64,000 nucleotides of DNA from Macrostomum lignano (GCA_002269645.1 NIVC01001511.1:248001-312000), one strand, 5' to 3'. Shown: positions 22,311 through 61,610, counted from the stretch's first letter. The notes: generated by a model from the letters alone, not told the origin. A program made the numbers and translations.

Positions 22311-22328
22311 CATCCGTGTTACAACGAT

Positions 22329-22413
22329 AAAGCGGTAAACTACGTGCGCATCGTGGCTTACAAAGCTACAGCCTACGCGTATAGTCGTAGCTTTACGGGT
22401 AGTTTGCCGCTTT
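22329..22413. other. Terminal 85-nt stem-loop of the left giant arm
   Basis: AAAGCGGTAAACTAC (22329-22343) pairs with GTAGTTTGCCGCTTT (22399-22413); inner stem AAAGCTAC (22362-22369)/GTAGCTTT (22387-22394). Confidence 0.85.
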
Positions 22414-23898
22414 CAATGCGGAACATATACCTTTACTTTGTACTTTTACATAGGACGGGGAATAAGCGCTAATTTAAATGCGCATGATGACCCAGGATGG
22501 TAGTCAGCAGCGGTGCTGCGCTCAGGGTGCAATCATCTGATATACTAGGCCAGCAATTGTTGCCTTAGAGTTATAGTAGAAAGAAAGCCTTTTATCTGAC
22601 CTTCATAGGTAATATTGTACTGTAGTATTGATCGTCCTTTTTAGATTGTTGAATATTAATTGATTTAACAAGCATTGGTTATAGTTATAGCATTGCTCAA
22701 TAAAATGTAAATCTACTACAGCTACTTTCTAGGTCAATTAATTGGCTGGCTGACTAAGGATTCAAGAAGATTTTGCCTTTGGATTGTTGAGCATTATATA
22801 TATAGGCCTAGACACCTAGTTAATCTTTTGCAGTCAATTTGCTTAATAGAAGAGAAACCTTTATTTCTATAAGGGAGGGAATAATATGTGGCTCTAATTA
22901 AGATATAATTTATTAATGAATTAGATATGGACAATGTCATAATTGCATATAGACCTAACATAGGCCTAGCACCTAGGCTATTGTTATTCTATATTGTCAT
23001 CATAATGAATATAGTAGGCCTAGGCCTAACACTAGGCATAGCAATTAATTTAGAAAAAATATTTTTGCTAGGGGCCTAGGCCTATATCAATATTCAGGCC
23101 TAATTGTAGTGCTTTCTAATATTAATTATTTTTACAAATAAACAATATACCATTTTTATTTACCACTTATAAATAAAGAATTAGAATAGATAAGCCATCT
23201 AGGAGTAGCATGGGAGAGTAGTCATTTTAGGCCCTAAACTTCATTTTGCTTATATTAGATCTATATATAATTAATAAAGCTTTGAATATAAACCATTTTC
23301 TTTTTATATCCTTATTCTTTTCTATTATTATTAGCATTTTTTATCCTAGCTTCCTTTCCTTTTTTTTCCTTTTATGCTATTCTAATAATATTCTTTTCCT
23401 TTATTCCTTTTTGTTATCCCTTCTCCCACCTTATTTATCATATGAATCCTTTTTCTATCCCTTTTGCCATGCTTCCCCTTATCTTCTATATCATCCCCTT
23501 TTTCCTATTCTACCTAACTATTACCTATAATAACTTTTTATGATGTATACTATTCATTCCTTTTTATTCTTTTTCTTTGCCATATTGCCCTTTTTTATTA
23601 TCATTTTTCTCTCTTACCTCTTTAACATTTTTACTTACCCCTAGACCTTGCCATTCCATTCTCCCATTCTTTTTGCTTACCCCTACCCTTGACATTCTTC
23701 TCCTTGCCTATGTTTGTTATTCTTCTACTTTCTTTTCATTCTTATATTTTTTCTTCTATATTCCTTGCTAAACTTCCCTTCTTCCCCTATCCTTGCCATT
23801 CCTGTCTTCTTTGCCATTCCTTTCCTCTTCTATCCTTGCTGCAATTCCCCTCCTCCCCCATCCTCTTTGCCATTCCTCTTTGCTTTGCTCTTTTTTCT

Positions 23899-24480
23899 CC
23901 CCTTTAAACCCCACCTTCTCCTCCCTTTCAGACCCCACCCTCTCCTTCCCTTTAGATCCAACTCTCTCTTCCCCTTCAGACCCCACCCTCTCCTCCCCTT
24001 CAAATTCCACCCTCTTGTCCCCTTCAGACCCAACTCTCTTCCCCTTCAGACCCCACCCTCTCCTCCTCTTCAGATTCCACCCTCTCCTCCCCTTCAGACC
24101 CAACCTTCTCTTCCCCTTCAGACCCCACCCTCTCCTCCCCTTCAGATCCTACCCTCTCCTCCCCTTCAGACCCCACCCTCTCCTCCCCTTCAGACCCCAC
24201 CCTCTCCTTCCCTTCAAACCCTCTCCTCCCCTTCAGATCACACCCTCTCCTCCCCTTCAGACCCCACCCTCTCCTCCCCTTCAGACCCCACCCTCTCCTT
24301 CCCTTCAAACCCTCTTCTCCCCTTCAGATCACACCCTCTCCTCCCCTTCAGACCCCACCCTCTCCTCCCCTTCAGACCCCACCCTCTCCTTCCCTTCAAA
24401 CCCTCTCCTCCCCTTCAGACCCCACCCTCTCCTCCCCTTCAGACCCCAGCCTCTTCTCCCCTTCAGACCCTACCCTTTTC
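23899..24480 (+). repeat. 24-bp polypyrimidine minisatellite (CCCCTTCAGACCCCACCCTCTCCT), about 24 units, left arm
   Basis: Direct reading; grades out of a degenerate CT-rich tract at about 23300-23900. Confidence 0.95.
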
Positions 24481-24579
24481 TCCTTTCCAGCCTCACCTCG
24501 TAGTTCTGCTAATTAAACTTTAACTATACTTTTTAGAAGAAGTGAAGAAGAATTTCTCTTCTTCTTCTCTTTAGAATGT

Positions 24580-25340
24580 CCTCGCACCGGTCTTGTGGTC
24601 ATTCTACGTGCCGTAGCGACTGGTCGCAGCAACCATAGCTCTCTACCAGGAGACCCTTGCCGCCGTAGTGGCACCTGACGTACTGTCCGACCTGTTCAAC
24701 ACGACCTCAGGGTGCTGCAAGGCGAGGCGACACGCGGCCTACCTTTTCGTGTTGGTGCTCGATGGGGTGCTACGGAGGGCCCTGCCAACAGATGAGGACA
24801 GCTTCCTACTGTGCCTGCAAACAAACAGCCGCCATCTGGAGAAGCGGCTGTCGCTCCTGGGTTACGCCGACGGCCTGGCGCTGCTTGCCTCTACGGCTGA
24901 GGGAGCCCAGCGTATGCTAGACAGCCTTGTGGCAGCTGCGGCATCGGTCGGGCTAGCGGCGAACATCGAGAAGACGGAGGTGATGACTGTACCTGCTGAG
25001 CTGCCTATCAAAATCACCTGCTGGGACGCCCGACGATCGTGCAGCGGCTCTACCTCGTTGCACGCGCTTCACGTACCTCGGCAGTCTTGTGCCCAGTGTC
25101 CAGGAGGACTTGGCGCGACGCAGGGCCTGGCCTGGGTTGCCTTCCGCTCCATCCGAGTTGTCCTGCAGAACGCCGCGCTGCCAGACTGCTGCGACGACCT
25201 AGCGAGACCCTCCGCAGGCAGACTTCAACTGGCGGACCACACCATTCGGCGGAGGCTTACTGTTCTCAACCAGTGCAGGACGTCCTGCTACTCACGATGC
25301 AGGGCCCCTGGTCCCGAGGCTACGGCCGGGCGAGCCGGTG
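24580..25340 (+). pseudogene. Internally deleted RTE-like reverse transcriptase fragment inside the left arm
   Basis: DLFNTTSG..., YLFVLVLDGVLRRAL, LGYADGLALL (YADD to YADG), GL..N.EKTEVM, GLAWVAFRSIRVVLQ; same family as 16776-18150. Confidence 0.85.
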
Positions 25341-25382
25341 TCAATGCTATTATTGCGTGTAATATTGTTCGCAAAATATTAC

Positions 25383-25427
25383 GCGGCAGTAGCTAAATAT
25401 TGGTTGTCAATATTTAGCTACTGCCGC
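25383..25427. other. Perfect 20-bp-stem hairpin (mirror at 45502-45546)
   Basis: GCGGCAGTAGCTAAATATTG-GTTGT-CAATATTTAGCTACTGCCGC. Confidence 0.95.
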
Positions 25428-26210
25428 TGTTTTGCATTACAGCTATATAGTACTTCCGCATGTACTGACGTAACATTGCGCCAATAATTTTACATTGCGT
25501 GGCGCCGAAACCAATCTGCTGCTGAATGCTACTAGCGTAATAGCCGTTTGAATCTCTTGAAATACATTGAAATGCCATGCTGTAGTATTGCTTTTGACAA
25601 TCTAAACGAGACTAGCCAGACTCCTCACTGATCCATATGCTTCTCAAGCAAGGTATATATGGAAAGCAGATTGAGCAGCAAACTTAGTATTTGATCTTTG
25701 GATCACTCATACGAGCTAGAACCAAGGAATGTAGGTCTAAAATTTCAATAAAAGTTCTTGATATAATGGAATGCAATAAATGCCAACCGGGGTCATTTTT
25801 TCAACTTCCACTTTCCCCGAGTTTGACCACTTTCTCTGCTACAGGCTTAAGCTAAACCAACGCAAAATACTAGCCTGAATAAAAAACAACTCACTTCACA
25901 ACATTCACCTTAATCTTTCTTTCTGCCACTGCTTTTGCAATACTCATAAAAATCCTGTGACTTCGCTTCAGAAACATGCTTGAGAAACATATGGCGTCCC
26001 ATTTGAATTGGCGCAAGTCTCTTACATCGTCAAAAGCAATACGTCTGGTGCCAATTATTTGTGCCGATCAAGCTTCCTAGAGAATGCTTTGTTGATAACT
26101 GCATGTCCCTGTCTTGAAGCTTGCACGCTGTGTTTAACCATTATTTTGTCGGTGTACAACGTGCACCCGATCAGACGAATTGGTGGTAAATTCCCTAAAA
26201 TCCTGATAGA

Positions 26211-29067
26211 GGCGGAGCTGTTGGGGAAAAGGCTGCAAGCAGCGGAACTGTTGGGGGGAGAGGCGGTAGACAGCGGAGCTGTTGGGGGAGCCGCGGTGGG
26301 CAGCGGAGCTGTTGGGGGAGTGGCGTCATGCAGCGGAGCTGTTGGAGGAGTGGCGTCAAGCAGCGGAGCTGTTGGGGGAGTGGCGTCAAGCATTGGAGCT
26401 GTTGGGGGAGTGGCGTCATGCAGCGGAGCTGTTGGGGGAGTGGCGTCATGCAGCGGAGGTGTTGGGGGAGTGGCGTCAAGCATTGGAGCTGTTGGGGGAG
26501 TGGCGTCAAGCAGCGGAGCTGTTGGGGGAGCCGCGGTGGGCAGCGGAGCTGTTGGGGGAGTGGCGTCATGCAGCGGAGCTGTTGGGGGAGTGGCGTCAAG
26601 CAGCGGAGCTGTTGGGGGAGTGGCGTCAAGCAGCGGAACTGTTGGGGGAGCTGCGGTGGGCAGCGGAGCTGTTGGAGGAGTGGCGTCAAGCAGCGGAGCT
26701 GTTGGGGGAGTGGCGTCATGCAGCGGAACTGTTGGGGGAGTGGCGTCAAGCAGCGGAACTGTTGGGGGAGTGGCGTCAAGCAGCGGAGGTGTTGGGGGAG
26801 TGGCGTCAAGCATTGGAGCTGTTGGGGGAGTGGCGTCAAGCAGCGGAGCTGTTGGGGGAGCCGCGGTGGGCAGGGAGCTGTTGGGGGAGTGGCGTCATGC
26901 AGCGGAGCTGTTGGGGGAGTGGCGTCAAGCAGCGGAGCTGTTGGGGGAGCCGCGGTGGGCAGCGGAGCTGTTGAGGGAGTGGCGTCAAGCAGCGGAGCTG
27001 TTGGGGGAGTGGCGTCAAGCAGCGGAGCTGTTGGGGGAGCCGCGGTGGGCAGCGGAGCTGTTGGGGGAGTGGCGTCAAGCAGCGGAGCTGTTGGGGGAGT
27101 GGCGTCATGCAGCGGAGGTGTTGGGGGAGTGGCGTCAAGCAGCGGAGCTGTTGGGGGAGCCGCGGTGGGCAGCGGAGCTGTTGGGGGAGTGGCGTCAAGC
27201 AGCGGAGCTGTTGGGGGAGCCGCGGTGGGCAGCGAAGCTGTTGGGGAAACCGCGGTGGGCAGCGGAGCTGTTTGGGGGAGCCGCGGTGGGCAGCGGAGCT
27301 GTTGGGGGAGCCGCGGTGGGCAGCGGAGCTGTTGGGGGAGCCGCGGTGGGCAGCGGAGCTGTTTGGGGGAGTGGCGTCAAGCATCGGAGCTGTTGGGGGA
27401 GTGGCGTCAAGCAGCGGAGCTGTTGGGGGAGCCGCGGTGGGCAGCGGAGCTGTTTGAGGAGTGGCGTCAAGCAGCGGAACTGTTGGGGGAGTGGCGTCAA
27501 GCGGTGGAGCTGTTGGGGGAGTGGCGTCAAGCAGCGGAGCTGTTGGGGGAGCCGCGGTGGGCAGCGGAGCTGTTGGGGGAGCCGCGGTGGGCAGCGGTGC
27601 GGTTGGGGGAGCCGCGGTGGGCAGCGGAGCTGTTTGGGGGAGTGGCGTCAAGCATCGGAGCTGTTGGGGGAGTGGCGTCAAGCAGCGGAACTGTTGGGGG
27701 AGCCGCGGTGGGCAGCGGAGCTGTTGGAGGAGTGGCGTCAAGCAGCGAAACTGTTGGGGGAGTGGCGTCAAGCGGCGGAGCTGTTGGGGGAGTGGCGTCA
27801 AGCAGCGGAGCTGTTGGGGGAGTGGCGTCAAGCAGCGGAGCTGTTGGGGGAGTGGCGTCAAGCAGCGGAACTGTTGGGGGAGTGGCGTCAAGCAGCGGAG
27901 CTGTTGGGGGAGCCGCGGTGGGCAGCGGAGCTGTTGGGGGAGTGGCGTCATGCAGCGGAGCTGTTGGGGGAGTGGCGTCAAGCAGCGGAGCTGTTGGGGG
28001 AGTGGCGTCTTGCAGCGGAGCTGTTGGGGGAGTGGCGTCAAGCAGCGGAACTGTTGGGGGAGCCGCGGTGGGCAGCGGAGCTGTTGGGGGAGCCGCGGTG
28101 GGCAGCGGAGCTGTTTGGGGGAGCCGCGGTGGGCAGCGGAGCTGTTGGGGGAGCCGCGGTGGGCAGCGGAGCTGTTGGGGGAGCCGCGGTGGGCAGCGGA
28201 GCTGTTGGGGAAGAGGCTGCAAGCAGCGGAACTGTTGGGGGGGGAGTGGCGTCATGCAGCGGAGCTGTTGGGGAGTGGCGTCAAGCAGCGGAGCTGTTGG
28301 GGGAGTGGCGTCATGCAGCGGAACTGTTGGGGGAGTGGCGTCATGCAGCGGAACTGTTGGGGGAGCCGCGGTGGGCAGCGGAGCTGTTGGGGGAGCCGCG
28401 GTGGGCAGCGGAGCTGTTTGGGGAGCCGCGGTGGGCAGCGGAGCTGTGGGGGAGCCGCGGTGGGCAGCGGAGCTGTTGGGGGAGTGGCGTCATGCAGCGG
28501 TGTTGGGGAGTGGCGTCATGCAGCGGTGTTGGGGAGTGGCGTCATGCAGCGGAGCTTTTGGGGGAGTGGCGTCAAGCAGCGGAGCTGTTGGGGAGCCGCG
28601 GTGGGCAGCGGAGCTGTTGGGGAGCCGCGGTGGGCAGCGGAGCTGTTTGGGGGAGCCGCGGTGGGCAGCGGAGCTGTTGGGGGAGCCGCGGTGGGCAGCG
28701 GAGCTGTTGGGGAGTGGCGTCAAGCAGCGGAACTGTTGGGGGAGCCGCGGTGGGCAGCGGAGCTGTTGGGGGAGTGGCGTCAAGCAGCGGAGCTGTTGGG
28801 GGAGTGGCGTCAAGCAGCGGAACTGTTGGGGGAGCCGCGGTGGGCAGCGGAGCTGTTGGGGGAGTGGCGTCATGCAGCGGAGCTGTTGGGGGAGTGGCGT
28901 CATGCAGCGGAGCTGTTGGGGGAGCCGCGGTGGGCAGCGGAGCTGTTGGGGGGAGTGATGTCAAGCAGCGGAACTGTTGGGGGAGCCGCGGTGGGCAGCG
29001 GAGCTGTTGGGGGAGCCGCGGAGGGCAGCGGAGCTGTTGGGGGAGCCGCGGTGGGCAGCGGAGCTGT
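26211..29067 (+). repeat. 30-bp GC-rich satellite array, G-rich strand on +, about 95 units
   Basis: Constant 20-mer CAGCGGAGCTGTTGGGGGAG plus a 10-mer that is TGGCGTCAAG (A), TGGCGTCATG (A') or CCGCGGTGGG (B). Confidence 0.98.
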
Positions 29068-29340
29068 AATATCTGGGTTTAAGTATGTTATTCTAATGTA
29101 CCTGGTAATTCGCTGCCTGTCAGCCGCGATGGATCTACAGGGAGCGGAGATTATTTATCCACCGGAGATAAACTCGCGCTAAATACGAGTATATACTCGT
29201 ATATTGCATTGCACTGATACCAAATAAAGGAGGCTGTTGTCTATGGTAGCGGATCGGAGATAAGCTACTGATAACCGCCGCAGGACATCTATAATTAGCC
29301 ATTGCAATTATTATTTCTGCCGCCAGTATTATATTACACA

Positions 29341-29587
29341 CTCAACAACATGTTAAAGTTTCCACCCTGAAACCACTGGTCAACAAATTGCAGCTTTAGT
29401 CCAACTCCTAGGCCATAAATCTCCACTCCCTCCTCACCAGCCTAAGCTGGGGCCTTTGTGACGCAAATTGCATCATCCACTGTTAAGAAGAGAACCGCGG
29501 GCGTGGTGTGAGTTGCGTCACCTTGAGCCGAGATCTGAGAACAGTTGACCACTGGCTTCGGGGTGGAAACTTTAACATGTTGCTGAG
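29341..29587. mobile_element. Small MITE-like element (44-bp imperfect TIR) in the central spacer
   Basis: CTCAACAACATGTTAAAGTTTCCACCCTGAAACCACTGGTCAAC (29341-29384) versus its near reverse complement at 29544-29587. Confidence 0.65.
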
Positions 29588-30409
29588 TGTAGCTATTGCT
29601 AGTTATATACGAGTAGAACTCCTTGGTATAGACAGGCGAATAGGCAGAATGAATGAATGAATTTAACGATTCATGCCTTACTTCCTTGGCTATTTCTTTA
29701 ACAGTGGAATGGCCAAAACTCACTAAAATGAGGCCTGATAATTCAAAACGAGACCTGGGGACCCAGAGTAGAGCCACTCGTCAATTTTTTACTTGAAGCT
29801 GAAAATGAAAGACATCGCCCTTGGGCAGTCCAGCCCTTCAGATTTTTCAGATTTCCATCTGATTTTCAGATTTTCCAGCAGTCAAAGGTTGAAATTCATG
29901 TCAAGGTTTTGATATCCACTTCTTCCATGTTGAAAATTGAATACTGAAGCACTCGACTCGCTCAGCAAATTCACCCTACCCCTTCATTTTGCTCCTATAA
30001 AATACACTAGCTACTGTAGTATTGTGTTGCCGGTTTTTATTCAGTTTATGACAGAAAGGGCTCTCTCTCTCTCTCTGCCTACCCTTCAACTCGTAATATC
30101 TGTGGAGTAAGTATATTTCTCATTTATTGTGTTTGAAGAAACTTACGGCACGCGCGAAGCGTCGAGCTGTCGCGAGAGAGGGGGGCTCTGCAGTCCCAGT
30201 CCCGACCCCCGATCAAACGCCTTAGCGTAGGTTTTCAACAATTGATTGCTGCAATTTGACTGCAGTCAATTTGTCTGGCGACTAAATGAACTCTTAAAAT
30301 TAACACCTCAAGACTCGAAACGCGGCACTCGATCGTTTCGAATCATTTTCTAATTTTCTGCTTAAACCTATTTCTGCCGCCATGACAACTCTCAAAGCTC
30401 CGGCCCATC

Positions 30410-33400
30410 CCGCCTCCCACAACAGTTCCGCTGCCTGCCGCCTCTCCCCCAACACTTCGAAGCAGCTCCGCTGCTTGACGCCACTCCCCCAACAGCTCCG
30501 CTGCTTGACGCCACTCCCCCAACAGTTCCGCTGCTTGACGCCACTCCCCCAACAGCTCCGCTGCTTGACGCCATTCCCCCAACAGCTCCGCTGCTTGACG
30601 CCACTCCCCCAACAGTTCCGCTGCTTGACGCCACTCCCCCAACAGCTCCGCTGCTTGACGCCACTCCCCCAACAGCTCCGCTGCCCACCGCGGCTCCCCC
30701 AACAGCTCCGCTGCCCTCCGCGGCTCCCCCAACAGCTCCGCTGCTTGACGCCACTCGCCCAACAGCTCCGCTGCCCTCCGCGGCTCCCCCAACAGCTCCG
30801 CTGCTTGACGCCACTCGCCCAACAGCTCCGCTGCCCTCCGCGGCTCCCCCAACAGTTCCGCTGCTTGACGCCACTCCCCCAACAGCTCCGCTGCATGACG
30901 CAACTCCCCCAACAGCTCCGCTGCATGACACCACTCCCCCAACAGCTCCGCTGCTTGACGCCACTCCCCCAACAGCTCCGCTGCCCACCGCGGCTCCCCC
31001 AACAGCTCCGCTGCCCACCGCGGCTCCCCCAACAGTTCCGCTGCGTGACGCCACTCCCCCAACAGCTCCGATGCTTGACGCCACTCCCCCAAACAGCTCC
31101 GCTGCCCACCGCGGTTTCCCCAACAGCTCCGCTGCCCACCGCGGCTCCCCCAACAGTTCCGCTGCTTGACGCCACTCCCCCAACAGCTCCGCTGCCCACC
31201 GCGGCTCCCCCAACAGCTCCGCTGCCCACCGCGGCTCCCTTAACAGTTCCGCTGCGTGACGCCACTCCCCCAACAGCTCCGATGCTTGACGCCACTCCCC
31301 CAAACAGCTCCGCTGCCCACCGCGGTTTCCCCAACAGCTCCGCTGCCCACCGCGGCTCCCCCAACAGTTCCGCTGCTTGACGCCACTCCCCCAACAGCTC
31401 CGCTGCTTGACGCCACTCCCCTAACAGCTCCGCTGCCTACCGCGGCGCCCCCAACAGCTCCGCTGCTTGACGCCACTCCCCCAACAGCTCCGCTGCATGA
31501 CGCAACTCCCCCAACAGCTCCGCTGCATGACACCACTCCCCCAACAGCTCCGCTGCTTGACGCCACTCCCCCAACAGCTCCGCTGCCCACCGCGGCTCCC
31601 CCAACAGCTCCGCTGCCCACCGCGGCTCCCCCAACAGTTCCGCTGCGTGACGCCACTCCCCCAACAGCTCCGATGCTTGACGCCACTCCCCCAAACAGCT
31701 CCGCTGCCCACCGCGGTTTCCCCAACAGCTCCGCTGCCCACCGCGGCTCCCCCAACAGTTCCGCTGCTTGACGCCACTCCCCCAACAGCTCCGCTGCTTG
31801 ACGCCACTCCCCTAACAGCTCCGCTGCCTACCGCGGCGCCCCCAACAGCTCCGCTGCTTGACGCCACTCCCCCAACAGCTCCGCTGCTTGACGCCACTCC
31901 CCCAACAGCTCCGCTGCTTGACGCCACTCCCCCAACAGCTCCGCTGCCCACCGCGGCTCCCCCAACAGCTCCGCTGCTTGACGCCACTCCCCAACAGCTC
32001 CGCTGCTTGACGCCACTCCCCAACAGCTCCGCTGCCCACCGCGGCTCCCCCAACAGCTCCACTGCCCACCGCGGCTCCCCCAACAGCTCCGCTGCCCACC
32101 GCGGCTCCCCCAACAGCTCCGCTGCTTGACGCCACTCCCCCAACAGTTCCGCTGCTTGACGCCACTCCTCAAACAGCTCCGCTGCCCACCGCGGCTCCCC
32201 CAACAGCTCCGCTGCTTGACGCCACTCCCCCAACAGCTCCGATGCTTGACGCCACTCCCCCAAACAGCTCCGCTGCCCACCGCGGCTCCCCCAACAGCTC
32301 CGCTGCCCACCGCGGCTCCCCCAACAGCTCCGCTGCCCACCGCGGCTCCCCCAAACAGCTCCGCTGCCCACCGCGGCTCCCCCAACAGCTTCGCTGCCCA
32401 CCGCGGCTCCCCCAACAGCTCCGCTGCTTGACGCCACTCCCCCAACAGCTCCGCTGCCCACCGCGGCTCCCCCAACAGCTCCGCTGCTTGACGCCACTCC
32501 CCCAACACCTCCGCTGATTAACGCCACTCCCCCAACAGCTCCGCTGCATGACGCCACTCCCCCAACAGCTCCGCTGCTTGACGCCACTCCCCCAACAGCT
32601 CCGCTGCCCACCGCGGCTCCCCCAACAGCTCCGCTGCCCACCGCGGCTCCCCCAACAGTTCCGCTGCTTGACGCTACTCCCCCAACAGCTCCGATGCTTG
32701 ACGCCACTCCCCCAAACAGCTCCGCTGCTTGACGCCACTCCCCCAACAGCTCCGCTGCCCACCGCGGCTCCCCCAACAGCTCCGCTGCTTGACGCCACTC
32801 CCCCAACACCTCCGCTGCATGACGCCACTCCCCAACAGCTCCGCTGCATGACGCAACTCCCCCAAAAGCTCCGCTGCATGACACCACTCCCCCAACAGCT
32901 CCGCTGCTTGACGCCACTCCCCCAACAGCTCCGCTGCCCACCGCGGCTCCCCCAACAGCTCCGCTGCCCACCGCGGCTCCCCCAACAGTTCCGCTGCGTG
33001 ACGCCACTCCCAACAGCTCCGATGCTTGACGCCACTCCCCCAAACAGCTCCGCTGCCCACCGCGGCTCCCCCAACAGCTCCGCTGCCCACCGCGGCTCCC
33101 CCAACAGTTCCGCTGCTTGACGCCACTCCCCCAACAGCTCCGCTGCTTGACGCCACTCCCCTAACAGCTCCGCTGCCTACCGCGGCGCCCCCAACAGCTC
33201 CGCTGCTTGACGCCACTCCCCCAACAGCTCCGCTGCTTGACGCCACTCCCCCAACAGCTCCGCTGCTTGACGCCACTCCCCCAACAGCTCCGCTGCCCAC
33301 CGCGGCTCCCCCAACAGCTCCGCTGCTTGACGCCACTCCCCCAACACCTCCGCTGATTAACGCCACTCCCCCAACAGCTCCGCTGCATGACGCCACTCCC

Positions 33401-39400: not shown

Positions 39401-42400
39401 TCCGCTGCCCACCGCGGCTCCCCCAAACAGCTCCGCTTCCCACCGCGGTTTCCCAACAGCTTCGCTGCCCACCGCGGCTCCCCAACAGCTCCGCTGCTTG
39501 ACGCCACTCCCCAACACCTCCGCTGCCCACCGCGGCTCCCCCAACAGCTCCGCTGCTTGACGCCACTCCCCCAACACCTCCGCTGCATGACGCCACTCCC
39601 CCAACAGCTCCGCTGCTTGACGCCACTCCCCCAACAGCTCCGCTGCCCACCGCGGCTCCCCCAACAGCTCCGCTGCTTGACGCCACTCCCCCAACAGCTC
39701 CGCTGCTTGACGCCACTCCCCCAACAGCTCCGCTGCCCACCGCGGCTCCCCCAACAGCTCCACTGCCCACCGCGGCTCCCCCAACAGCTCCGCTGCCCAC
39801 CGCGGCTCCCCCAACAGCTCCGCTGCTTGACGCCACTCCCCCAACAGCTCCACCGCTTGACGCCACTCCCCCAACAGTTCCGCTGCTTGACGCCACTCCT
39901 CAAACAGCTCCGCTGCCCACCGCGGCTCCCCCAACAGCTCCGCTGCTTGACGCCACTCCCCCAACAGCTCCGATGCTTGACGCCACTCCCCCAAACAGCT
40001 CCGCTGCCCACCGCGGCTCCCCCAACAGCTCCACTGCCCACCGCGGCTCCCCCAACCGCTCCGCTGCCCACCGCGGCTCCCCCAAACAGCTCCGCTTCCC
40101 ACCGCGGTTTCCCCAACAGCTTCGCTGCCCACCGCGGCTCCCCAACAGCTCCGCTGCTTGACGCCACTCCCCCAACAGCTCCGCTGCCCACCGCGGCTCC
40201 CCCAACAGCTCCGCTGCTTGACGCCACTCCCCCAACACCTCCGCTGCATGACGCCACTCCCCCAACAGCTCCGCTGCTTGACGCCACTCCCCCAACAGCT
40301 CCGCTGCCCACCGCGGCTCCCCCAACAGCTCCGCTGCTTGACGCCACTCCCCCAACAGCTCCGCTGCTTGACGCCACTCCCCCAACAGCTCCGCTGCCCA
40401 CCGCGGCTCCCCCAACAGCTCCACTGCCCACCGCGGCTCCCCCAACAGCTCCGCTGCCCACCGCGGCTCCCCCAACAGCTCCGCTGCTTGACGCCACTCC
40501 CCCAACAGCTCCACCGCTTGACGCCACTCCCCCAACAGCTCCACCGCTTGACGCCACTCCCCCAACAGTTCCGCTGCTTGACGCCACTCCTCAAACAGCT
40601 CCGCTGCCCACCGCGGCTCCCCCAACAGTTCCGCTGCTTGACGCCACTCCCCCAACAGCTCCGATGCTTGACGCCACTCCCCCAAACAGCTCCGCTGCCC
40701 ACCGCGGCTCCCCCAACAGCTCCGCTGCCCACCGCGGCTCCCCCAACAGCTCCGCTGCCCACCGCGGCTCCCCCAAACAGCTCCGCTGCCCACCGCGGCT
40801 CCCCCAACAGCTCCGCTGCTTGACGCCACTCCCCCAACAGCTCCGCTGCCCACCGCGGCTCCCCCAACAGCTCCGCTGCTTGACGCCACTCCCCCAACAC
40901 CTCCGCTGCATGACGCCACTCCCCCAACAGCTCCGCTGCATGACGCCACTCCCACAACAGCTCCGCTGCTTGACGCCACTCCCCCAACAGCTCCGCTGCC
41001 CACCGCGGCTCCCCCAACAGCTCCGCTGCTTGACGCCACTCCCCCAACAGCTCCGCTGCTTGACGCCACTCCCCCAACAGCTCCGCTGCCCACCGCGGCT
41101 CCCCCAACAGCTCCACTGCCCACCGCGGCTCCCCCAACAGCTCCGCTGCTTGACGCCACTCCCCCAACAGCTCCGCTGCCCACCGCGGCTCCCCCAACAG
41201 CTCCGCTGCTTGACGCCACTCCCCCAACAGCTCCGCTGCCCACCGCGGCTCCCCCAACAGCTCCACTGCCCACCGCGGCTCCCCCAACAGCTCCGCTGCT
41301 TGACGCCACTCCCCCAACAGCTCCGCTGCCCACCGCGGCTCCCCCAACAGCTCCGCTGCTTGACGCCACTCCCCCAACAGCTCCGCTGCTTGACGCCACT
41401 CCTCCAACAGCTCCGCTGCCCACCGCGGCTCCCCCAACAGTTCCGCTGCTTGACGCCACTCCCCCAACAGCTCCGATGCTTGACGCCACTCCCCCAAACA
41501 GCTCCGCTGCCCACCGCGGCTCCCCCAACCGCTCCGCTGCCCACCGCGGCTCCCCCAACAGCTCCGCTGCCCACCGCGGCTCCCCCAACAGCTCCGCTGC
41601 TTGACGCCACTCCCCCAACAGCTCCACCGCTTGACGCCACTCCCCCAACAGTTCCGCTGCTTGACGCCACTCCTCAAACAGCTCCGCTGCCCACCGCGGC
41701 TCCCCCAACAGCTCCGCTGCTTGACGCCACTCCCCCAACAGCTCCGATGCTTGACGCCACTCCCCAAACAGCTCCGCTGCCCACCGCGGCTCCCCCAACA
41801 GCTCCGCTGCCCACCGCGGCTCCCCCAACCGCTCCGCTGCCCACCGCGGCTCCCCCAAACAGCTCCGCTTCCCACCGCGGTTTCCCCAACAGCTTCGCTG
41901 CCCACCGCGGCTCCCCCAACAGCTCCGCTGCTTGACGCCACTCCCCCAACACCTCCGCTGCCCACCGCGGCTCCCCCAACAGCTCCGCTGCTTGACGCCA
42001 CTCCCCCAACACCTCCGCTGCATGACGCCACTCCCCCAACAGCTCCGCTGCTTGACGCCACTCCCCCAACAGCTCCGCTGCCCACCGCGGCTCCCCCAAC
42101 AGCTCCGCTGCTTGACGCCACTCCCCCAACAGCTCCGCTGCTTGACGCCACTCCCCAACAGCTCCGCTGCCCACCGCGGCTCCCCAAACAGCTCCACTGC
42201 CCACCGCGGCTCCCCCAACAGCTCCGCTGCCCACCGCGGCTCCCCCAACAGCTCCGCTGCTTGACGCCACTCCCCCAACAGCTCCACCGCTTGACGCCAC
42301 TCCCCCAACAGTTCCGCTGCTTGACGCCACTCCTCAAACAGCTCCGCTGCCCACCGCGGCTCCCCCAACAGCTCCGCTGCTTGACGCCACTCCCCCAACA

Positions 42401-44718
42401 GCTCCGATGCTTGACGCCACTCCCCCAAACAGCTCCGCTGCCCACCGCGGCTCCCCCAACAGCTCCGCTGCCCACCGCGGCTCCCCCAACCGCTCCGCTG
42501 CCCACCGCGGCTCCCCCAAACAGCTCCGCTTCCCACCGCGGTTTCCCCAACAGCTTCGCTGCCCACCGCGGCTCCCCCAACAGCTCCGCTGCTTGACGCC
42601 ACTCCCCCAACACCTCCGCTGCCCACCGCGGCTCCCCCAACAGCTCCGCTGCTTGACGCCACTCCCCCAACACCTCCGCTGCATGACGCCACTCCCCCAA
42701 CAGCTCCGCTGCTTGACGCCACTCCCCCAACAGCTCCGCTGCCCACCGCGGCTCCCCCAACAGCTCCGCTGCTTGACGCCACTCCCCCAACAGCTCCGCT
42801 GCTTGACGCCACTCCCCCAACAGCTCCGCTGCCCACCGCGGCTCCCCCAACAGCTCCACTGCCCACCGCGGCTCCCCCAACAGCTCCGCTGCCCACCGCG
42901 GCTCCCCCAACAGCTCCGCTGCTTGACGCCACTCCCCCAACAGCTCCACCGCTTGACGCCACTCCCCCAACAGTTCCGCTGCTTGATGCCACTCCCCCAA
43001 CAGCTCCGCTGCTTGACGCCACTCCCCCAACAGCTCCGCTGCTTGACGCCACTCCCCCAACAGCTCCGCCGCTTGACGCCACTCCCCCAACAGTTTCGCT
43101 GCTTGACGCCACTCCTCCAACAGCTCCGCTGCCCACCGCGGCTCCCCCAACAGTTCCGCTGCTTGACGCCACTCCCCCAACAGCTCCGATGCTTGACGCC
43201 ACTCCCCCAAACAGCTCCGCTGCCCACCGCGGCTCCCCCAACCGCTCCGCTGCCCACCGCGGCTCCCCCAACAGCTCCGCTGCCCACCGCGGCTCCCCCA
43301 ACAGCTCCGCTGCTTGACGCCACTCCCCCAACAGCTCCACCGCTTGACGCCACTCCCCAACAGTCCGCTGCTTGACGCCACTCCTCAAACAGCTCCGCTG
43401 CCCACCGCGGCTCCCCCAACAGCTCCGCTGCTTGACGCCACTCCCCAACAGCTCCGATGCTTGACGCCACTCCCCCAAACAGCTCCGCTGCCCACCGCGG
43501 CTCCCCCAACAGCTCCGCTGCCCACCGCAGCTCCCCCAACAGCTCCGCTGCCCACCGCGGCTCCCCCAACAGCTCCGCTGCCCACCGCGGTTTCCCCAAC
43601 AGCTTCGCTGCCCACCGCGGCTCCCCCAACAGCTCCGCTGCTTGACGCCACTCCCCCAACAGCTCCGCTGCCCACCGCGGCTCCCCCAACAGCTCCGCTG
43701 CTTGACGCCACTCCCCAACACTCCGCTGCATGACGCCACTCCCCCAACAGCTCCGCTGCTTGACGCCACTCCCCCAACAGCTCCGCTGCCCACCGCGGCT
43801 CCCCCAACAGCTCCGCTGCTTGACGCCACTCCCCCAACAGCTCCGCTGCTTGACGCCACTCCCTCAACAGCTCCGCTGCCCACCGCGGCTCCCCCAACAG
43901 CTCCACTGCCCACCGCGGCTCCCCCAACAGCTTTGCTGCCCACCGCGGCTCCCCCAACAGCTCCGCTGCTTGACGCCACTCCCCCAACAGCTCCGCTGCA
44001 TGACGCCACTCCCCCAACAGCTCCGCTGCCCACCGCGGCTCCCCCAACAGCTCCGCTGCTTGACGCCACTCCCCCAACAGCTCCAATGCTTGACGCCACT
44101 CCCCCAACACCTCCGCTGCTTGACGCCACTCCCCCAACAGTTCCGCTGCTTGACGCCACTCCCCCAACAGTTCCGCTGCATGACGCCACTCCCCCAACAG
44201 CTCCGCTGCTTGACGCCACTCCTCCAACAGCTCCGCTGCCCACCGCAGCTCCCCCAACAGTTCCGCTGCTTGACGCCACTCCCCCAACAGCTCCGCTGCT
44301 TGACGCCACTCCCCCAACAGCTCCGCTGCATGACGCCACTCCCCCAACAGCTCCGCTGCATGACGCCACTCCCCCAACAGCTCCGCTGCCCACCGCGGCT
44401 CCCCCAACAGCTCCGCTGCTTGACGCCACTCCCCCAACAGCTCCAATGCTTGACGCCACTCCCCCAACACCTCCGCTGCATGACGCCACTCCCCCAACAG
44501 CTCCGCTGCATGACGCCACTCCCCAACAGCTCCAATGCTTGACGCCACTCCCCCAACAGCTCCGCTGCTTGACGCCACTCCTCCAACAGCTCCGCTGCAT
44601 GACGCCACTCCCCCAACAGCTCCGCTGCCCACCGCGGCTCCCCCAACAGCTCCGCTGTCTACCGCCTCTCCCCCCCAACAGTTCCGCTGCTTGCAGCCTT
44701 TTCCCCAACAGCTCCGCC
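30410..44718 (-). repeat. Inverted 30-bp satellite array, about 14.3 kb (roughly 475 units)
   Basis: Same units in reverse orientation, with recurrent 31-bp variants and higher-order blocks; homopolymer indels are denser around 34.9-39.5 kb. Confidence 0.98.
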
Positions 44719-45589
44719 TCTATCAGGATTTTAGGGAATTTACCACCAATTCGTCTGATCGGGTGCACGTTGTACACCGACAAAATAATGGTTAAACACA
44801 GCGTGCAAGCTTCAAGACAGGGACATGCAGTTATCAACAAAGCATTCTCTAGGAAGCTTGATCGGCACAAATAATTGGCACCAGACGTATTGCTTTTGAC
44901 GATGTAAGAGACTTGCGCCAATTCAAATGGGACGCCATATGTTTCTCAAGCATGTTTCTGAAGCGAAGTCACAGGATTTTTATGAGTATTGCAAAAGCAG
45001 TGGCAGAAAGAAAGATTAAGGTGAATGTTGTGAAGTGAGTTGTTTTTTATTCAGGCTAGTATTTTGCGTTGGTTTAGCTTAAGCCTGTAGCAGAGAAAGT
45101 GGTCAAACTCGGGGAAAGTGGAAGTTGAAAAAATGACCCCGGTTGGCATTTATTGCATTCCATTATATCAAGAACTTTTATTGAAATTTTAGACCTACAT
45201 TCCTTGGTTCTAGCTCGTATGAGTGATCCAAAGATCAAATACTAAGTTTGCTGCTCAATCTGCTTTCCATATATACCTTGCTTGAGAAGCATATGGATCA
45301 GTGAGGAGTCTGGCTAGTCTCGTTTAGATTGTCAAAAGCAATACTACAGCATGGCATTTCAATGTATTTCAAGAGATTCAAACGGCTATTACGCTAGTAG
45401 CATTCAGCAGCAGATTGGTTTCGGCGCCACGCAATGTAAAATTATTGGCGCAATGTTACGTCAGTACATGCGGAAGTACTATATAGCTGTAATGCAAAAC
45501 AGCGGCAGTAGCTAAATATTGACAACCAATATTTAGCTACTGCCGCGTAATATTTTGCGAACAATATTACACGCAATAATAGCATTGAC

Positions 45590-46350
45590 ACCGGCTCGCC
45601 CGGCCGTAGCCTCGGGACCAGGGGCCCTGCATCGTGAGTAGCAGGACGTCCTGCACTGGTTGAGAACAGTAAGCCTCCGCCGAATGGTGTGGTCCGCCAG
45701 TTGAAGTCTGCCTGCGGAGGGTCTCGCTAGGTCGTCGCAGCAGTCTGGCAGCGCGGCGTTCTGCAGGACAACTCGGATGGAGCGGAAGGCAACCCAGGCC
45801 AGGCCTGCGTCGCGCCAAGTCCTCCTGGACACTGGGCACAAGACTGCCGAGGTACGTGAAGCGCGTGCAACGAGGTAGAGCCGCTGCACGATCGTCGGGC
45901 GTCCCAGCAGGTGATTTTGATAGGCAGCTCAGCAGGTACAGTCATCACCTCCGTCTTCTCGATGTTCGCCGCTAGCCCGACCGATGCCGCAGCTGCCACA
46001 AGGCTGTCTAGCATACGCTGGGCTCCCTCAGCCGTAGAGGCAAGCAGCGCCAGGCCGTCGGCGTAACCCAGGAGCGACAGCCGCTTCTCCAGATGGCGGC
46101 TGTTTGTTTGCAGGCACAGTAGGAAGCTGTCCTCATCTGTTGGCAGGGCCCTCCGTAGCACCCCATCGAGCACCAACACGAAAAGGTAGGCCGCGTGTCG
46201 CCTCGCCTTGCAGCACCCTGAGGTCGTGTTGAACAGGTCGGACAGTACGTCAGGTGCCACTACTGCGGCAAGGGTCTCCTGGTAGAGAGCTATGGTTGCT
46301 GCGACCAGTCGCTACGGCACGTAGAATGACCACAAGACCGGTGCGAGGAC
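45590..46350 (-). pseudogene. Mirror copy of the RTE-like RT fragment, right arm
   Basis: Reverse complement of 24580-25340 with a 1-bp indel near 45805. Confidence 0.85.
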
Positions 46351-46449
46351 ATTCTAAAGAGAAGAAGAAGAGAAATTCTTCTTCACTTCTTCTAAAAAGT
46401 ATAGTTAAAGTTTAATTAGCAGAACTACGAGGTGAGGCTGGAAAGGAGA

Positions 46450-47030
46450 AAAGGGTAGGGTCTGAAGGGGAGAAGAGGCTGGGGTCTGAAGGGGAGGAGA
46501 GGGTGGGGTCTGAAGGGGAGGAGAGGGTTTGAAGGGAAGGAGAGGGTGGGGTCTGAAGGGGAGGAGAGGGTGGGGTCTGAAGGGGAGGAGAGGGTGTGAT
46601 CTGAAGGGGAGAAGAGGGTTTGAAGGGAAGGAGAGGGTGGGGTCTGAAGGGGAGGAGAGGGTGGGGTCTGAAGGGGAGGAGAGGGTGTGATCTGAAGGGG
46701 AGGAGAGGGTTTGAAGGGAAGGAGAGGGTGGGGTCTGAAGGGGAGGAGAGGGTGGGGTCTGAAGGGGAGGAGAGGGTAGGATCTGAAGGGGAGGAGAGGG
46801 TGGGGTCTGAAGGGGAAGAGAAGGTTGGGTCTGAAGGGGAGGAGAGGGTGGAATCTGAAGAGGAGGAGAGGGTGGGGTCTGAAGGGGAAGAGAGTTGGAT
46901 CTGAAGGGGACAAGAGGGTGGAATTTGAAGGGGAGGAGAGGGTGGGGTCTGAAGGGGAAGAGAGAGTTGGGTCTAAAGGGAAGGAGAGGGTGGGGTCTGA
47001 AAGGGAGGAGAAGGTGGGGTTTAAAGGGGA
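46450..47030 (-). repeat. Mirror copy of the 24-bp minisatellite, right arm
   Basis: AGGAGAGGGTGGGGTCTGAAGGGG units. Confidence 0.95.
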
Positions 47031-48491
47031 GAAAAAAGAGCAAAGCAAAGAGGAATGGCAAAGAGGATGGGGAGGAGGGGAATTGCAGCAAGGATAGAAG
47101 AGGAAAGGAATGGCAAAGAAGACAGGAATGGCAAGGATAGGGGAAGAAGGGAAGTTTAGCAAGGAATATAGAAGAAAAAATATAAGAATGAAAAGAAAGT
47201 AGAAGAATAACAAACATAGGCAAGGAGAAGAATGTCAAGGGTAGGGGGTAAGCAAAAAGAATAGGAGAATGGAATGGCAAGGTCTAGGGGTAAGTAAAAA
47301 TGTTAAAGAGGTAAGAGAGAAAAATGATAATAAAAAAGGGCAATATGGCAAAGAAAAAGAATAAAAGGAATGAATAGTATAGATCATAAAAAGTTATTAT
47401 AGGTAATAGTTAGGTAGAATAGGAAAAAGGGGATGATATAGAAGATAAGGGGAAGCATGGCAAAAGGGATAGAAAAAGGATTCATATGATAAATAAGGTG
47501 GGAGAAGGGATAACAAAAAGGAATAAAGGAAAAGAATATTATTAGAATAGCATAAAAGGAAAAAAAAGGAAAGGAAGCTAGGATAAAAAATGCTAATAAT
47601 AATAGAAAAGAATAAGGATATAAAAAGAAAATGGTTTATATTCAAAGCTTTATTAATTATATATAGATCTAATATAAGCAAAATGAAGTTTAGGGCCTAA
47701 AATGACTACTCTCCCATGCTACTCCTAGATGGCTTATCTATTCTAATTCTTTATTTATAAGTGGTAAATAAAAATGGTATATTGTTTATTTGTAAAAATA
47801 ATTAATATTAGAAAGCACTACAATTAGGCCTGAATATTGATATAGGCCTAGCAAAAATATTTTTTCTAAATTAATTGCTATGCCTAGTGTTAGGCCTAGG
47901 CCTACTATATTCATTATGATGACAATATAGAATAACAATAGCCTAGGTGCTAGGCCTATGTTAGGTCTATATGCAATTATGACATTGTCCATATCTAATT
48001 CATTAATAAATTATATCTTAATTAGAGCCACATATTATTCCCTCCCTTATAGAAATAAAGGTTTCTCTTCTAATTAAGCAAATTGACTGCAAAAGATTAA
48101 CTAGGTGTCTAGGCCTATATATATAATGCTCAACAATCCAAAGGCAAAATCTTCTTGAATCCTTAGTCAGCCAGCCAATTAATTGACCTAGAAAGTAGCT
48201 GTAGTAGATTTACATTTTATTGAGCAATGCTATAACTATAACCAATGCTTGTTAAATCAATTAATATTCAACAATCTAAAAAGGACGATCAATACTACAG
48301 TACAATATTACCTATGAAGGTCAGATAAAAGGCTTTCTTTCTACTATAACTCTAAGGCAACAATTGCTGGCCTAGTATATCAGATGATTGCACCCTGAGC
48401 GCAGCACCGCTGCTGACTACCATCCTGGGTCATCATGCGCATTTAAATTAGCGCTTATTCCCCGTCCTATGTAAAAGTATGTTCCGCATTG

Positions 48492-48576
48492 AAAGCGGCA
48501 AACTACCCGTAAAGCTACGACTATACGCGTAGGCTGTAGCTTTGTAAGCCACGATGCGCACGTAGTTTACCGCTTT
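48492..48576. other. Terminal 85-nt stem-loop of the right giant arm (mirror copy)
   Basis: Reverse complement of 22329-22413. Confidence 0.85.
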
Positions 48577-48629
48577 ATCGTTGTGACACGGGTGTTCGAA
48601 TGCGGGTCATTACTATTAATAATTTCCAT

Positions 48630-57600: not shown

Positions 57601-57611
57601 TCTCCCCTCTT
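57601..57611 (-). promoter_or_regulatory. Polypurine tract of element 2
   Basis: AAGAGGGGAGA immediately before the 3' LTR. Confidence 0.9.
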
Positions 57612-57657
57612 ACAATGGCAAAGAAATTTTTTTTAAGTTAATGCGGGGGAACAAATT

Positions 57658-61575: not shown

Positions 61576-61610
61576 TATGAGCTTGAACGTCTGACCGTCA
61601 GGTTACGATT

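What the first reader, a model, noticed from the sequence alone, without database searches (positions are those of the whole stretch)
22311..48594. 26-kb satellite-armed giant foldback: modular inverted arms with hairpin ends and unequal arrays
Seen: two 3.9-kb arms about 99 percent identical, each ordered outside-in as terminal stem-loop, AT-rich GGCCTA tract, CT tract, 24-bp minisatellite, RTE fragment, 20-bp hairpin, then 30-bp satellite. The satellite is 2.9 kb on the left and 14.3 kb on the right, around a 1.3-kb spacer with no transposase. Established: foldback elements (Drosophila FB, Galileo, sea-urchin TU) have long TIRs with internal tandem arrays of unequal length, but they are usually a few kb. 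Inference: this is either a much larger non-autonomous foldback or macro-transposon that moves satellite around the genome, or a local inverted duplication. The multi-base indels between arms (15 bp, 8 bp) argue against a simple hairpin-read artefact but do not exclude a haplotype or amplification chimera.
Basis: partly seen in the sequence, partly recalled or inferred. Interest (0 to 1): 0.8.

Follow-up and report, generated by a model that had tools for sequence, protein, structure and literature searches.

The report
Inverted duplication around a flatworm satellite
In the flatworm Macrostomum lignano, a 3.9-kb stretch plus the start of a 30-bp satellite array occurs twice in mirror orientation over 26 kb; it is most likely a recent one-off inverted duplication beside a small foldback transposon, not a proven giant mobile element.

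Summary
Arms 22311-26211 and 44718-48594 are 99.1% identical in inverted orientation (6 substitutions, a 15-bp indel, an 8-bp indel, 6 single-base indels). They enclose 30-bp satellite arrays of 2.86 kb and 14.26 kb around a 1,395-bp non-coding spacer.

New findings:
- The mirror homology runs about 1.6 kb into the satellite.
- The left array ends abruptly mid-monomer, while the right array decays gradually at both edges.
- The arms have no target-site duplication.
- A second palindrome (P1, 19489-22303; 1,354-bp arms, 107-bp centre) abuts the left arm. It looks like a real foldback/MULE-type insertion with a perfect 9-bp duplication, AACCGGTCA.
- The window is Macrostomum lignano Mlig_3_7 contig NIVC01001511.1 (PacBio CLR, Canu).

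Arm divergence (0.15% substitutions) is about ten-fold below subgenome divergence (1.4-2.4%), so a paralogue chimera is unlikely.

The best reading is a recent local inverted duplication of the array edge and its flank, possibly seeded by a break beside P1, followed by array turnover. Mobility of the 26-kb unit is unsupported, and copy number could not be tested. Interest is modest.

The parts
22311..26211 (+). Left arm of the 26-kb palindrome (P2). Order from outside in: terminal stem-loop, GGCCTA-rich AT tract, CT tract, 24-bp minisatellite, RT fragment, 45-nt hairpin, unique 0.8 kb.
   Evidence: 99.1% inverted match to 44718-48594. Strict identity starts at 22314. Modules.
26212..29067 (+). 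Left 30-bp satellite array (about 95 monomers, G-rich strand on +). The first 55 or so monomers mirror the arm-proximal part of the right array. It ends abruptly inside a monomer (GGAGCTGT|AATATC).
   Evidence: TRF. (monomer strings); 26200-27850 matches the right array at 98-99.7%, 27850-29067 at only 90-96%. (junction sequence).
29068..30462 (.). Unique non-coding spacer of 1,395 bp. It contains a 253-bp MITE-like inverted-repeat unit (29338-29590).
   Evidence: sequence; no ORF above 111 aa. IR 29338-29384 / 29544-29590 at 91%; no SMRTbell adapter.
30463..44717 (-). Right 30-bp satellite array (about 475 monomers, C-rich on +). It has higher-order repeats and degenerate monomers at both edges. 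The array-start monomers recur internally at 34359-34649.
44718..48594 (-). Right arm of P2, the mirror image of the left arm.
22329..22413 (+). Subterminal stem-loop in the arm, with a 15-bp stem (mirror copy at about 48492-48576).
   Evidence: I1, 93% complementary. DNA fold -21.2 kcal/mol, z = -2.24.
23897..24483 (+). 24-bp C-rich minisatellite, about 25 copies (mirror copy 46445-47031).
24668..25396 (+). ORF carrying a non-LTR-type reverse-transcriptase fragment (mirror copy about 45533-46260). It is a truncated retroelement present in both arms.
   Evidence: RVT_1, E = 9.4e-6, 25.9 bits, below the 29.6 cut-off; one hit, 58% identity, PF00078.
25383..25427 (.). 45-nt near-perfect hairpin (mirror copy 45502-45546).
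   Evidence: sequence.
19489..22303 (.). P1, a 2.8-kb foldback-type non-autonomous transposon. TIRs are 19489-20842 and 20950-22303 (two substitutions); the centre is 107 bp. The outer 420 bp carry subterminal CGGTGAAC/TTCACCGG motifs and a repeat of about 162 bp.
19480..19488 (+). Left copy of the 9-bp direct repeat AACCGGTCA flanking P1 (candidate target-site duplication).
   Evidence: Sequence read.
22304..22312 (+). Right copy of AACCGGTCA. It overlaps or abuts the first bases of the P2 left arm.
   Evidence: Sequence read; empty-site join.

Best explanation
P2 is a real, recent, one-off local inverted duplication (a palindrome with a spacer). It is not shown to be a mobile element.

Inferred ancestral locus: left flank, spacer, one 30-bp satellite array, a 3.9-kb flank, right flank.

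Inferred event: a DNA break or stalled fork at the left edge of the spacer was repaired by copying in inverted orientation. The template was the nearby outer flank and the first 95 or so monomers of the array, about 6.75 kb in total. This would be a template switch or microhomology-mediated break-induced replication, or capture of a fragment. The new copy was then rejoined to the spacer.

Inferred aftermath: the two arrays diverged by unequal exchange, with higher-order-repeat amplification on the right and loss of old monomers. The arms picked up a few substitutions and slippage indels.

The break site lies within 2 bp of the end of P1, a 2.8-kb near-perfect foldback transposon with a 9-bp target-site duplication. 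Long palindromes are known fragile sites. P1 therefore probably came first and provoked the break. This last step is the least certain.

Shown directly: the anatomy, the edge asymmetry, the lack of a TSD, the P1 duplication and the divergence figures.
For: 1. The arms are 99.1% identical with only 6 substitutions in 3.9 kb. The mirror collinearity continues for about 55 monomers into the arrays before breaking down. The duplicated unit was therefore flank plus array edge.
2. The left array stops mid-monomer against unique sequence, which marks a breakpoint. The right array has degenerate monomers at both ends, which marks natural, older edges. The right side is therefore the donor.
3. There is no TSD and no further inverted homology at the arm ends once P1 is removed (shuffles reach the score in 25-48% of trials).
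4. The arms are heterogeneous sequence that includes a truncated RT-bearing retroelement mirrored in both arms. This is what a segmental copy would give.
5. The 15-bp and 8-bp indels lie between short direct repeats (TACTTT.., CTAGG..), a replication-slippage signature of independently evolving copies.
6. The window is internal to the 362-kb contig NIVC01001511.1 of M. lignano Mlig_3_7 (assembly described in PMC5730564).
7. Substitution divergence between arms is 0.15%, against 1.4-2.4% between subgenomes and about 0 within a subgenome of the inbred DV1 line (PMC10733133). The arms are therefore neither paralogues nor identical copies.
8. P1 has a perfect 9/9 direct repeat at its TIR tips and subterminal repeats. 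A random insertion would land within 10 bp of the arm boundary with a probability of about 3e-4 in a 64-kb window.
9. The region is rich in sequence prone to non-B DNA structure: a 1.2-kb polypyrimidine tract, G5 runs every 30 bp, and hairpins.
Against: - No ancestral single-copy state could be examined, because neither paralogous scaffolds nor reads were reachable.
- Microhomology at the two proposed junctions is only 0-3 nt, so the repair pathway is not identified.
- The distal 1.2 kb of the left array has no match better than 96% in the right array. That requires substantial later array turnover, or a different history.
- The 9-bp P1 duplication contains the palindrome ACCGGT, so only three positions separate a TSD from an extension of the inverted repeat.
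- The order of the P1 and P2 events is not established.
- Mlig_3_7 is a CLR draft known to contain errors. Array lengths and some single-base differences may be inaccurate.
Confidence: 0.55

Rival explanations
1. P2 is a very large non-autonomous foldback transposon, or the newly born progenitor of one. Its long TIRs contain an internal satellite, and a Mutator/FB-type transposase supplied in trans mobilises it, carrying satellite DNA to new loci.
For: - The architecture matches foldback elements: long inverted arms, tandem repeats on the inner side of each arm in unequal numbers, and a non-coding middle. Tetris and Galileo are described this way (PMC4079207).
- The same window holds clear foldback-type elements: P1 with a 9-bp duplication and a 358-bp mini-foldback built of tandem units. 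Such a transposition system therefore plausibly exists in this genome.
- There is a subterminal stem-loop at each tip.
Against: - No TSD of any length at the arm ends.
- The termini share no motif with P1, and subterminal repeats are only weak.
- The arms contain a truncated retroelement and generic low-complexity tracts.
- One array edge is a raw mid-monomer breakpoint.
- No second copy of either terminus or of the satellite was found in the window, in 46 kb of other M. lignano loci, or in the collections searched.
- At 26 kb it is far larger than described foldback elements.
Confidence: 0.15
2. The inverted juxtaposition is an assembly artefact of the Canu PacBio-CLR draft. In that case a single arm and array exist in the genome, and a chimeric read or a mis-join inside the satellite produced the second, inverted copy.
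For: - Mlig_3_7 was built from RSII CLR reads with Canu 1.4 and polished with Pilon.
- It is reported to contain errors, with 36% of its length in scaffolds chimeric between subgenomes and 93% of read pairs multi-mapping.
- A 14-kb satellite is hard to span with CLR reads.
- Six of the arm differences are homopolymer-length differences, which is typical of residual CLR error.
- The array-start monomers recurring inside the right array could mark a mis-join.
Against: - The structure is not symmetric about a point. The arrays differ five-fold in length and in monomer order, and a 1.4-kb unique spacer lies between them.
- No adapter sequence sits at either centre.
- The locus is more than 65 kb from either contig end.
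- The arms differ by 6 substitutions and two slippage-type multi-base indels. That is too many for one locus read twice in an inbred line and about ten-fold too few for two subgenome copies.
- Recurrent monomer variants sit in consistent higher-order positions, so the array consensus is not noise.
- A transposon with an intact 9-bp duplication sits exactly on the left junction.
Confidence: 0.15
3. The palindrome is old, possibly older than the genome duplication. Arm-to-arm gene conversion keeps the arms near-identical, as in the ampliconic palindromes of sex chromosomes. The low divergence then says nothing about its age.
For: - The differences are unevenly spread. There are 12 in the outer 2.35 kb and only 1 in the 1.6 kb next to the array, a pattern that conversion tracts could produce.
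- The arrays have diverged far more than the arms.
Against: - The outer part is low-complexity sequence (CT tract, minisatellite) that is intrinsically more mutable, which may explain the unevenness.
- P1's own arms show the same 0.15% divergence.
- No paralogous copy could be inspected.
Confidence: 0.1

Closest known systems
Foldback transposons with internal tandem repeats: Drosophila FB, Tetris of D. virilis (PMC4079207), Galileo
   Same: - Long inverted arms.
- Tandem repeats inside the arms in unequal numbers.
- A non-coding middle segment.
- A link between arm repeats and kb-size satellite arrays.
   Different: - Those elements have 7-10-bp TSDs, are multi-copy, have arms up to about 1.7 kb in Tetris, and have family-specific termini.
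- P2 has no TSD and no detected second copy.
- P2 has 3.9-kb arms of mixed sequence with a retroelement fragment.
- P2 carries 17 kb of satellite and has one raw breakpoint edge.
Tm1 Mutator/Foldback family of root-knot nematodes (PMC3169594). This is the closest match for P1, not P2.
   Same: - Variable-length long TIRs.
- 9-bp TSDs.
- Non-autonomous MITE-like members.
- Subterminal repeated motifs.
   Different: - P1's TIRs are 1,354 bp and mostly unique AT-rich sequence rather than 14-bp tandem repeats.
- No transposase or family relatives could be found here, so the superfamily rests on TSD length only.
Inverted duplications with a spacer made by fold-back or template-switch repair (MMBIR/FoSTeS-type DUP-INV events, and rearrangements induced by palindromes). 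This comparison rests on my own knowledge of the literature.
   Same: - Two near-identical inverted copies separated by unique sequence.
- Abrupt junctions without a TSD.
- Little or no microhomology.
- A location beside a long palindrome and sequence prone to non-B DNA structure.
   Different: - Those events are usually documented in human disease, cancer or yeast assays.
- Here one breakpoint lies inside a satellite, and the arrays have since been remodelled.
Large ampliconic palindromes, such as those on the primate Y and X chromosomes (from my own knowledge)
   Same: Arms above 99% identical, a unique spacer of a few kb, and possible arm-to-arm gene conversion.
   Different: Those palindromes are tens of kb to Mb long, carry genes and are conserved between species. 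This one is non-coding repeat DNA of unknown age.

Membership tests
Foldback / long-TIR DNA transposon (applied to the 26-kb P2) | Long terminal inverted repeats | tested here: met
   The 3.9-kb arms are 99.1% identical.
Foldback / long-TIR DNA transposon (applied to the 26-kb P2) | Tandem repeats within the arms, variable in number between arms | tested here: met
   The 30-bp satellite has 95 and 475 copies; there is also a 24-bp minisatellite in each arm.
Foldback / long-TIR DNA transposon (applied to the 26-kb P2) | Target-site duplication (8-10 bp for FB/MULE-type) directly flanking the termini | tested here: not met
   After removing P1 and one copy of its duplication, the flanks show no direct repeat. 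The best local match, GGTCAT, is 11 nt off register and is equalled by 25% of shuffles.
Foldback / long-TIR DNA transposon (applied to the 26-kb P2) | Multiple copies at unrelated loci, or empty-site alleles | not testable with these tools
   The M. lignano assembly cannot be searched by DNA here. There is no second copy in the window, in 46 kb of other M. lignano loci, or in the metagenome and prokaryote collections. Protein-level searches were negative.
Foldback / long-TIR DNA transposon (applied to the 26-kb P2) | Family-specific terminal motif or subterminal transposase-binding repeats | tested here: inconclusive
   Only one 15-bp stem-loop and weak 12-22-nt repeats occur in the outer 490 bp. 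No motif is shared with P1.
Foldback / MULE-like non-autonomous transposon (applied to the 2.8-kb P1) | Long TIRs with a short centre | tested here: met
   TIRs 19489-20842 and 20950-22303 have 2 substitutions; the centre is 107 nt.
Foldback / MULE-like non-autonomous transposon (applied to the 2.8-kb P1) | 8-10-bp target-site duplication | tested here: met
   AACCGGTCA occurs at 19480-19488 and 22304-22312, a 9/9 match directly abutting both TIR tips. The core ACCGGT is palindromic, so three positions carry the discrimination. A 9-bp TSD is typical of FB/MULE elements (PMC3169594; PMC4079207).
Foldback / MULE-like non-autonomous transposon (applied to the 2.8-kb P1) | Subterminal repeated motifs | tested here: met
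   TTCACCGG occurs twice per tip. The whole window has 6 such sites against 1.65 expected, with 1 of 100 shuffles reaching 6. CGGTGAAC repeats and a 162-bp subrepeat are also present.
Foldback / MULE-like non-autonomous transposon (applied to the 2.8-kb P1) | Other family copies, or a cognate transposase | not testable with these tools
   There is no ORF above 75 aa in P1. No other copy occurs in the window, the fetched loci or the collections.
Break-repair inverted segmental duplication (palindrome with spacer) | Two inverted copies of ordinary genomic sequence with abrupt junctions lacking a TSD | tested here: met
   Mid-monomer junction at 29067/29068. Arm ends without a TSD. Mixed arm content including an RT fragment.
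Break-repair inverted segmental duplication (palindrome with spacer) | A single-copy ancestral arrangement in paralogues, other lines or sister species | not testable with these tools
   This needs a DNA search of the Mlig_3_7 paralogous scaffolds or of other Macrostomum genomes.
Long-read hairpin or missed-adapter assembly artefact | Exact symmetry about a point, an adapter or nothing at the centre, usually at a contig end | tested here: not met
   The arrays are unequal and differently ordered, and the spacer is 1.4 kb. The best adapter match is 12 of 45. The locus is internal to a 362-kb contig.

The most novel reading that the evidence does not exclude
The 26-kb unit is a foldback macro-transposon caught at or just after its birth. 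A break beside an existing foldback element (P1) created new 3.9-kb inverted termini around a satellite. The unit is, or can become, mobile and so can spread a 30-bp satellite to new chromosomal sites in a genome where tandem repeats make up 15% of the DNA.
Probability: 0.12. Interest if true: 0.65.

Novelty: new member of a known kind. Interest (0 to 1): 0.3.

Why it matters
If it is real, the locus is a clean natural example of how a satellite array acquires an orientation switch and mirror-image flanks. It also places a long-palindrome transposon exactly on a rearrangement junction. That bears on how foldback elements and palindromes destabilise repeat-rich genomes such as M. lignano, which is about 75% repeats and neopolyploid. 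It would also give a concrete, PCR-testable marker for the quality of the Mlig_3_7 assembly. It does not currently show a new kind of mobile element.

Tried and rejected
- Recurrence elsewhere. Exact-pattern scans of the metagenome and prokaryote-genome collections with the commonest satellite monomer, the P2 terminus and the P1 terminus gave no hits. Those collections are not expected to hold flatworm DNA.
- Protein-level routes. The arm RT ORF found one 58% hit. An ORF spanning arm and satellite found nothing. Exact look-ups of the mariner ORF, a 42-aa terminal ORF and the RT ORF were not on record.
- Sampling other M. lignano loci through Gypsy relatives (L002, L003, and L001 beyond the window) showed no arm, satellite, spacer or P1 sequence.
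- A 10-mer (CGTTGTAACA) shared between the flank left of P1 and the P2 terminus was tested as a possible remnant terminus. Local alignment was no better than shuffles, so it was rejected.
- An arm extension or a TSD beyond 22311/48594 was rejected.
- tRNA/SINE or known-RNA origin of the terminal stem-loop was checked. There were no ARAGORN or Rfam hits.
- SMRTbell adapter at the centres was rejected.
It was replaced by an ORF listing. A full Pfam scan of stop-masked frames was not done.
- Literature searches found no description of this satellite or of foldback elements in Macrostomum.

Full report
**What is in the sequence.** The window is eukaryotic and dense with transposons. It holds two Gypsy elements, a mariner-like transposase and a reverse-transcriptase fragment, and it has no Rfam or tRNA hits. 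Self-comparison confirms the reported structure. Positions 22311/22314-26211 and 48594/48591-44718 are inverted copies at 99.1% identity. A base-by-base alignment shows 6 substitutions, a 15-bp indel at 22426, an 8-bp indel at 23068 and 6 single-base indels, nearly all in homopolymer runs. TRF finds the 30-bp satellite at 26212-29067 (95 copies) and, reverse-complemented, at 30463-44717 (475 copies). It also finds a 24-bp minisatellite in each arm. GC skew flips sign accordingly. The 1,395-bp spacer has no ORF above 111 aa. The RTE clade of the RT fragment was not verified.

1. Homology does not stop at the array boundary. I cut both arrays into monomers and coded each variant as a letter. The first 55 or so monomers are then collinear between the left array and the reverse complement of the right array, with a handful of monomer-level changes. 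At nucleotide level 26200-27850 finds 98-99.7% matches in the right array, whereas 27850-29067 finds only 90-96%.

2. The array edges are asymmetric. The right array decays into degenerate monomers at both ends. The left array shares the arm-side edge but stops mid-monomer against the spacer (GGAGCTGT|AATATCTGG). This makes the right side look ancestral and the left side look like a truncated inverted copy.

3. Immediately left of the arm lies a second palindrome, P1. Its arms are 19489-20842 and 20950-22303, with two substitutions and a 107-nt centre. Its TIR tips (ACTAACTACTGAATTCACCGG) are directly flanked by a perfect 9-bp direct repeat, AACCGGTCA, at 19480-19488 and 22304-22312. Its outer 420 bp carry repeated CGGTGAAC/TTCACCGG motifs and a 162-bp subrepeat. 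Its centre contains an 88% direct copy of an arm segment joined to the right arm through AATG microhomology. That is the expected scar of a one-ended element that became a foldback. A 9-bp TSD with long TIRs is the hallmark of Foldback/Mutator-type elements (PMC3169594; PMC4079207). The caveat is that ACCGGT is palindromic, so only three positions separate a TSD from an extended inverted repeat. The inverted-repeat reading needs an indel plus a mismatch in otherwise 99.85%-identical arms, so I favour the TSD.

**Is the 26-kb unit a transposon?** I joined the flanks to rebuild the site as it was before P1 inserted, then compared 40 nt on each side of P2, both directly (for a TSD) and inverted (for an arm extension). 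Neither comparison beats shuffled controls. A 10-mer shared with the flank left of P1 is also chance. The P2 termini occur only twice in the window and share nothing with P1. The arms are a patchwork of low-complexity tracts and a truncated retroelement. That is natural for a copied piece of genome and unusual for transposon termini. The one defining transposon feature I could test is therefore not met. Copy number could not be tested.

**Source and artefact question.** An exact look-up of the window's intact Gypsy pol places the window in NCBI GCA_002269645.1, contig NIVC01001511.1 (362,150 bp), at about 248001-312000. The accession NIVC01000000 is the Macrostomum lignano Mlig_3_7 assembly. 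That assembly was made from PacBio CLR reads with Canu 1.4 and polished with Pilon from DNA of the inbred DV1 line. Tandem repeats make up 15% of the genome (PMC5730564). A later study reports three subgenomes diverged by 1.4-2.4% in SNPs, negligible heterozygosity within each, and many chimeric scaffolds (PMC10733133).

The arms differ by 0.15% in substitutions. That is about ten-fold too little for two subgenome copies. It is also more than expected for one locus read twice, especially given two multi-base indels that lie between short direct repeats. The structure is not symmetric about a point, has no SMRTbell adapter at either centre, and is more than 65 kb from either contig end. Monomer variants recur at consistent higher-order positions. 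I therefore rate a pure artefact as unlikely (about 0.15). Array lengths and homopolymer differences in a CLR draft should still not be trusted in detail.

**Most likely mechanism.**

- Shown: flank plus array edge is present twice in inverted orientation, one junction is a raw breakpoint, there is no TSD, and a foldback transposon with an intact duplication sits on the other junction.
- Inferred: the ancestral order was left flank, (P1), spacer, array, 3.9-kb flank. A break at the left end of the spacer was repaired by priming on the outer end of the 3.9-kb flank 8-20 kb away. About 6.75 kb was copied inward in inverted orientation and then rejoined to the spacer, by template switching, MMBIR or fragment capture.
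- Afterwards the right array expanded by higher-order-repeat amplification and lost old monomers. A 290-bp copy of the array start even reappears at 34359-34649.
- A random insertion would fall within 10 bp of the junction only about 3 times in 10,000. I therefore think P1 came first and that its 1.35-kb perfect arms, a classic fragile structure, provoked the break. This is inference only. The reverse order, or a target preference of P1, is not excluded.
- The polypyrimidine tract and the G5 runs every 30 bp add further potential to stall replication forks.

**Comparison with known systems.** The unit works like, or at least looks like, a foldback element of the Tetris, Galileo or FB kind. It fails the membership test on TSD and has no evidence of copies. 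It fits the class of break-repair inverted duplications, or palindromes with a spacer. P1 by itself is a reasonable new member of the FB/MULE-like non-autonomous elements. A 358-bp mini-foldback built of tandem units at 17172-17529 shows that such elements are common here.

**Verdict.** This is a new example of a known kind of rearrangement in a repeat-rich draft genome, and interest is about 0.3. The decisive tests are a DNA search of the paralogous M. lignano scaffolds and spanning native long reads; neither was possible with these tools.

Noticed in passing
window 19480-22312: A second, 2.8-kb near-perfect palindrome (P1) abuts the reported structure. It has 1,354-bp arms, a 107-nt centre, a 9-bp flanking direct repeat (AACCGGTCA) and subterminal CGGTGAAC motifs. 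It is probably a foldback/MULE-type non-autonomous transposon.
   Followed up: yes
window 17172-17529: A 358-bp mini-foldback. Its two arms are made of CGCGACTGGATTT-type tandem units (about 15/30 bp) in opposite orientation around GGATTTAAATCC. The tips are GGGACGCTAGAATTC / GAATTCTAGCGTCCC, and AACATC directly abuts both tips. It lies in a 57% GC island.
   Followed up: partly
window 48620-49345: An inverted-repeat (MITE-like) element. The cores 48667-48753 and 49235-49323 are 91% identical. It begins only 26-73 bp to the right of the right arm's end.
   Followed up: partly
window 29338-29590: A 253-bp unit with 47-bp terminal inverted repeats (91%) inside the spacer between the two arrays.
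   Followed up: no
window 34359-34649: The degenerate first monomers of the satellite array (about 290 bp) recur in phase, at 99% identity, deep inside the right array. The copy resembles the left-array version. It could be an unequal-exchange or conversion product, or a mis-join in the CLR assembly.
   Followed up: partly
window 29065-29095 and 30093-30122: A direct repeat of about 29 nt that starts GTAATATCTG. One copy sits exactly at the junction of the left array and the spacer, and the other sits 1 kb further into the spacer. Its meaning is unknown.
   Followed up: no
window 52517-57163, 57411-61817, 61944-62819: Two Gypsy LTR retrotransposons lie side by side. The older one has 91.5% LTRs and broken ORFs. 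The younger one has 99% LTRs and an intact 1,305-aa pol; its closest relatives returned by the protein search are 52-66% identical (other M. lignano copies and unnamed assembly contigs). A further RT/RNase H fragment follows.
   Followed up: partly
window 13124-14185: An intact 353-aa mariner/Tc1-like transposase ORF (HTH_48, Transposase_1 and DDE_3 hits) in a 56% GC island. It is not in the GenBank gene set of the assembly.
   Followed up: no
window 23291-24483 (mirror copy 46445-47640): A 1.2-kb tract that is 80% or more pyrimidine on one strand (CT tract plus C-rich 24-bp minisatellite), next to a satellite with G5 runs every 30 bp. Both have strong potential to form triplex or G-quadruplex structures and may contribute to local fragility.
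   Followed up: no
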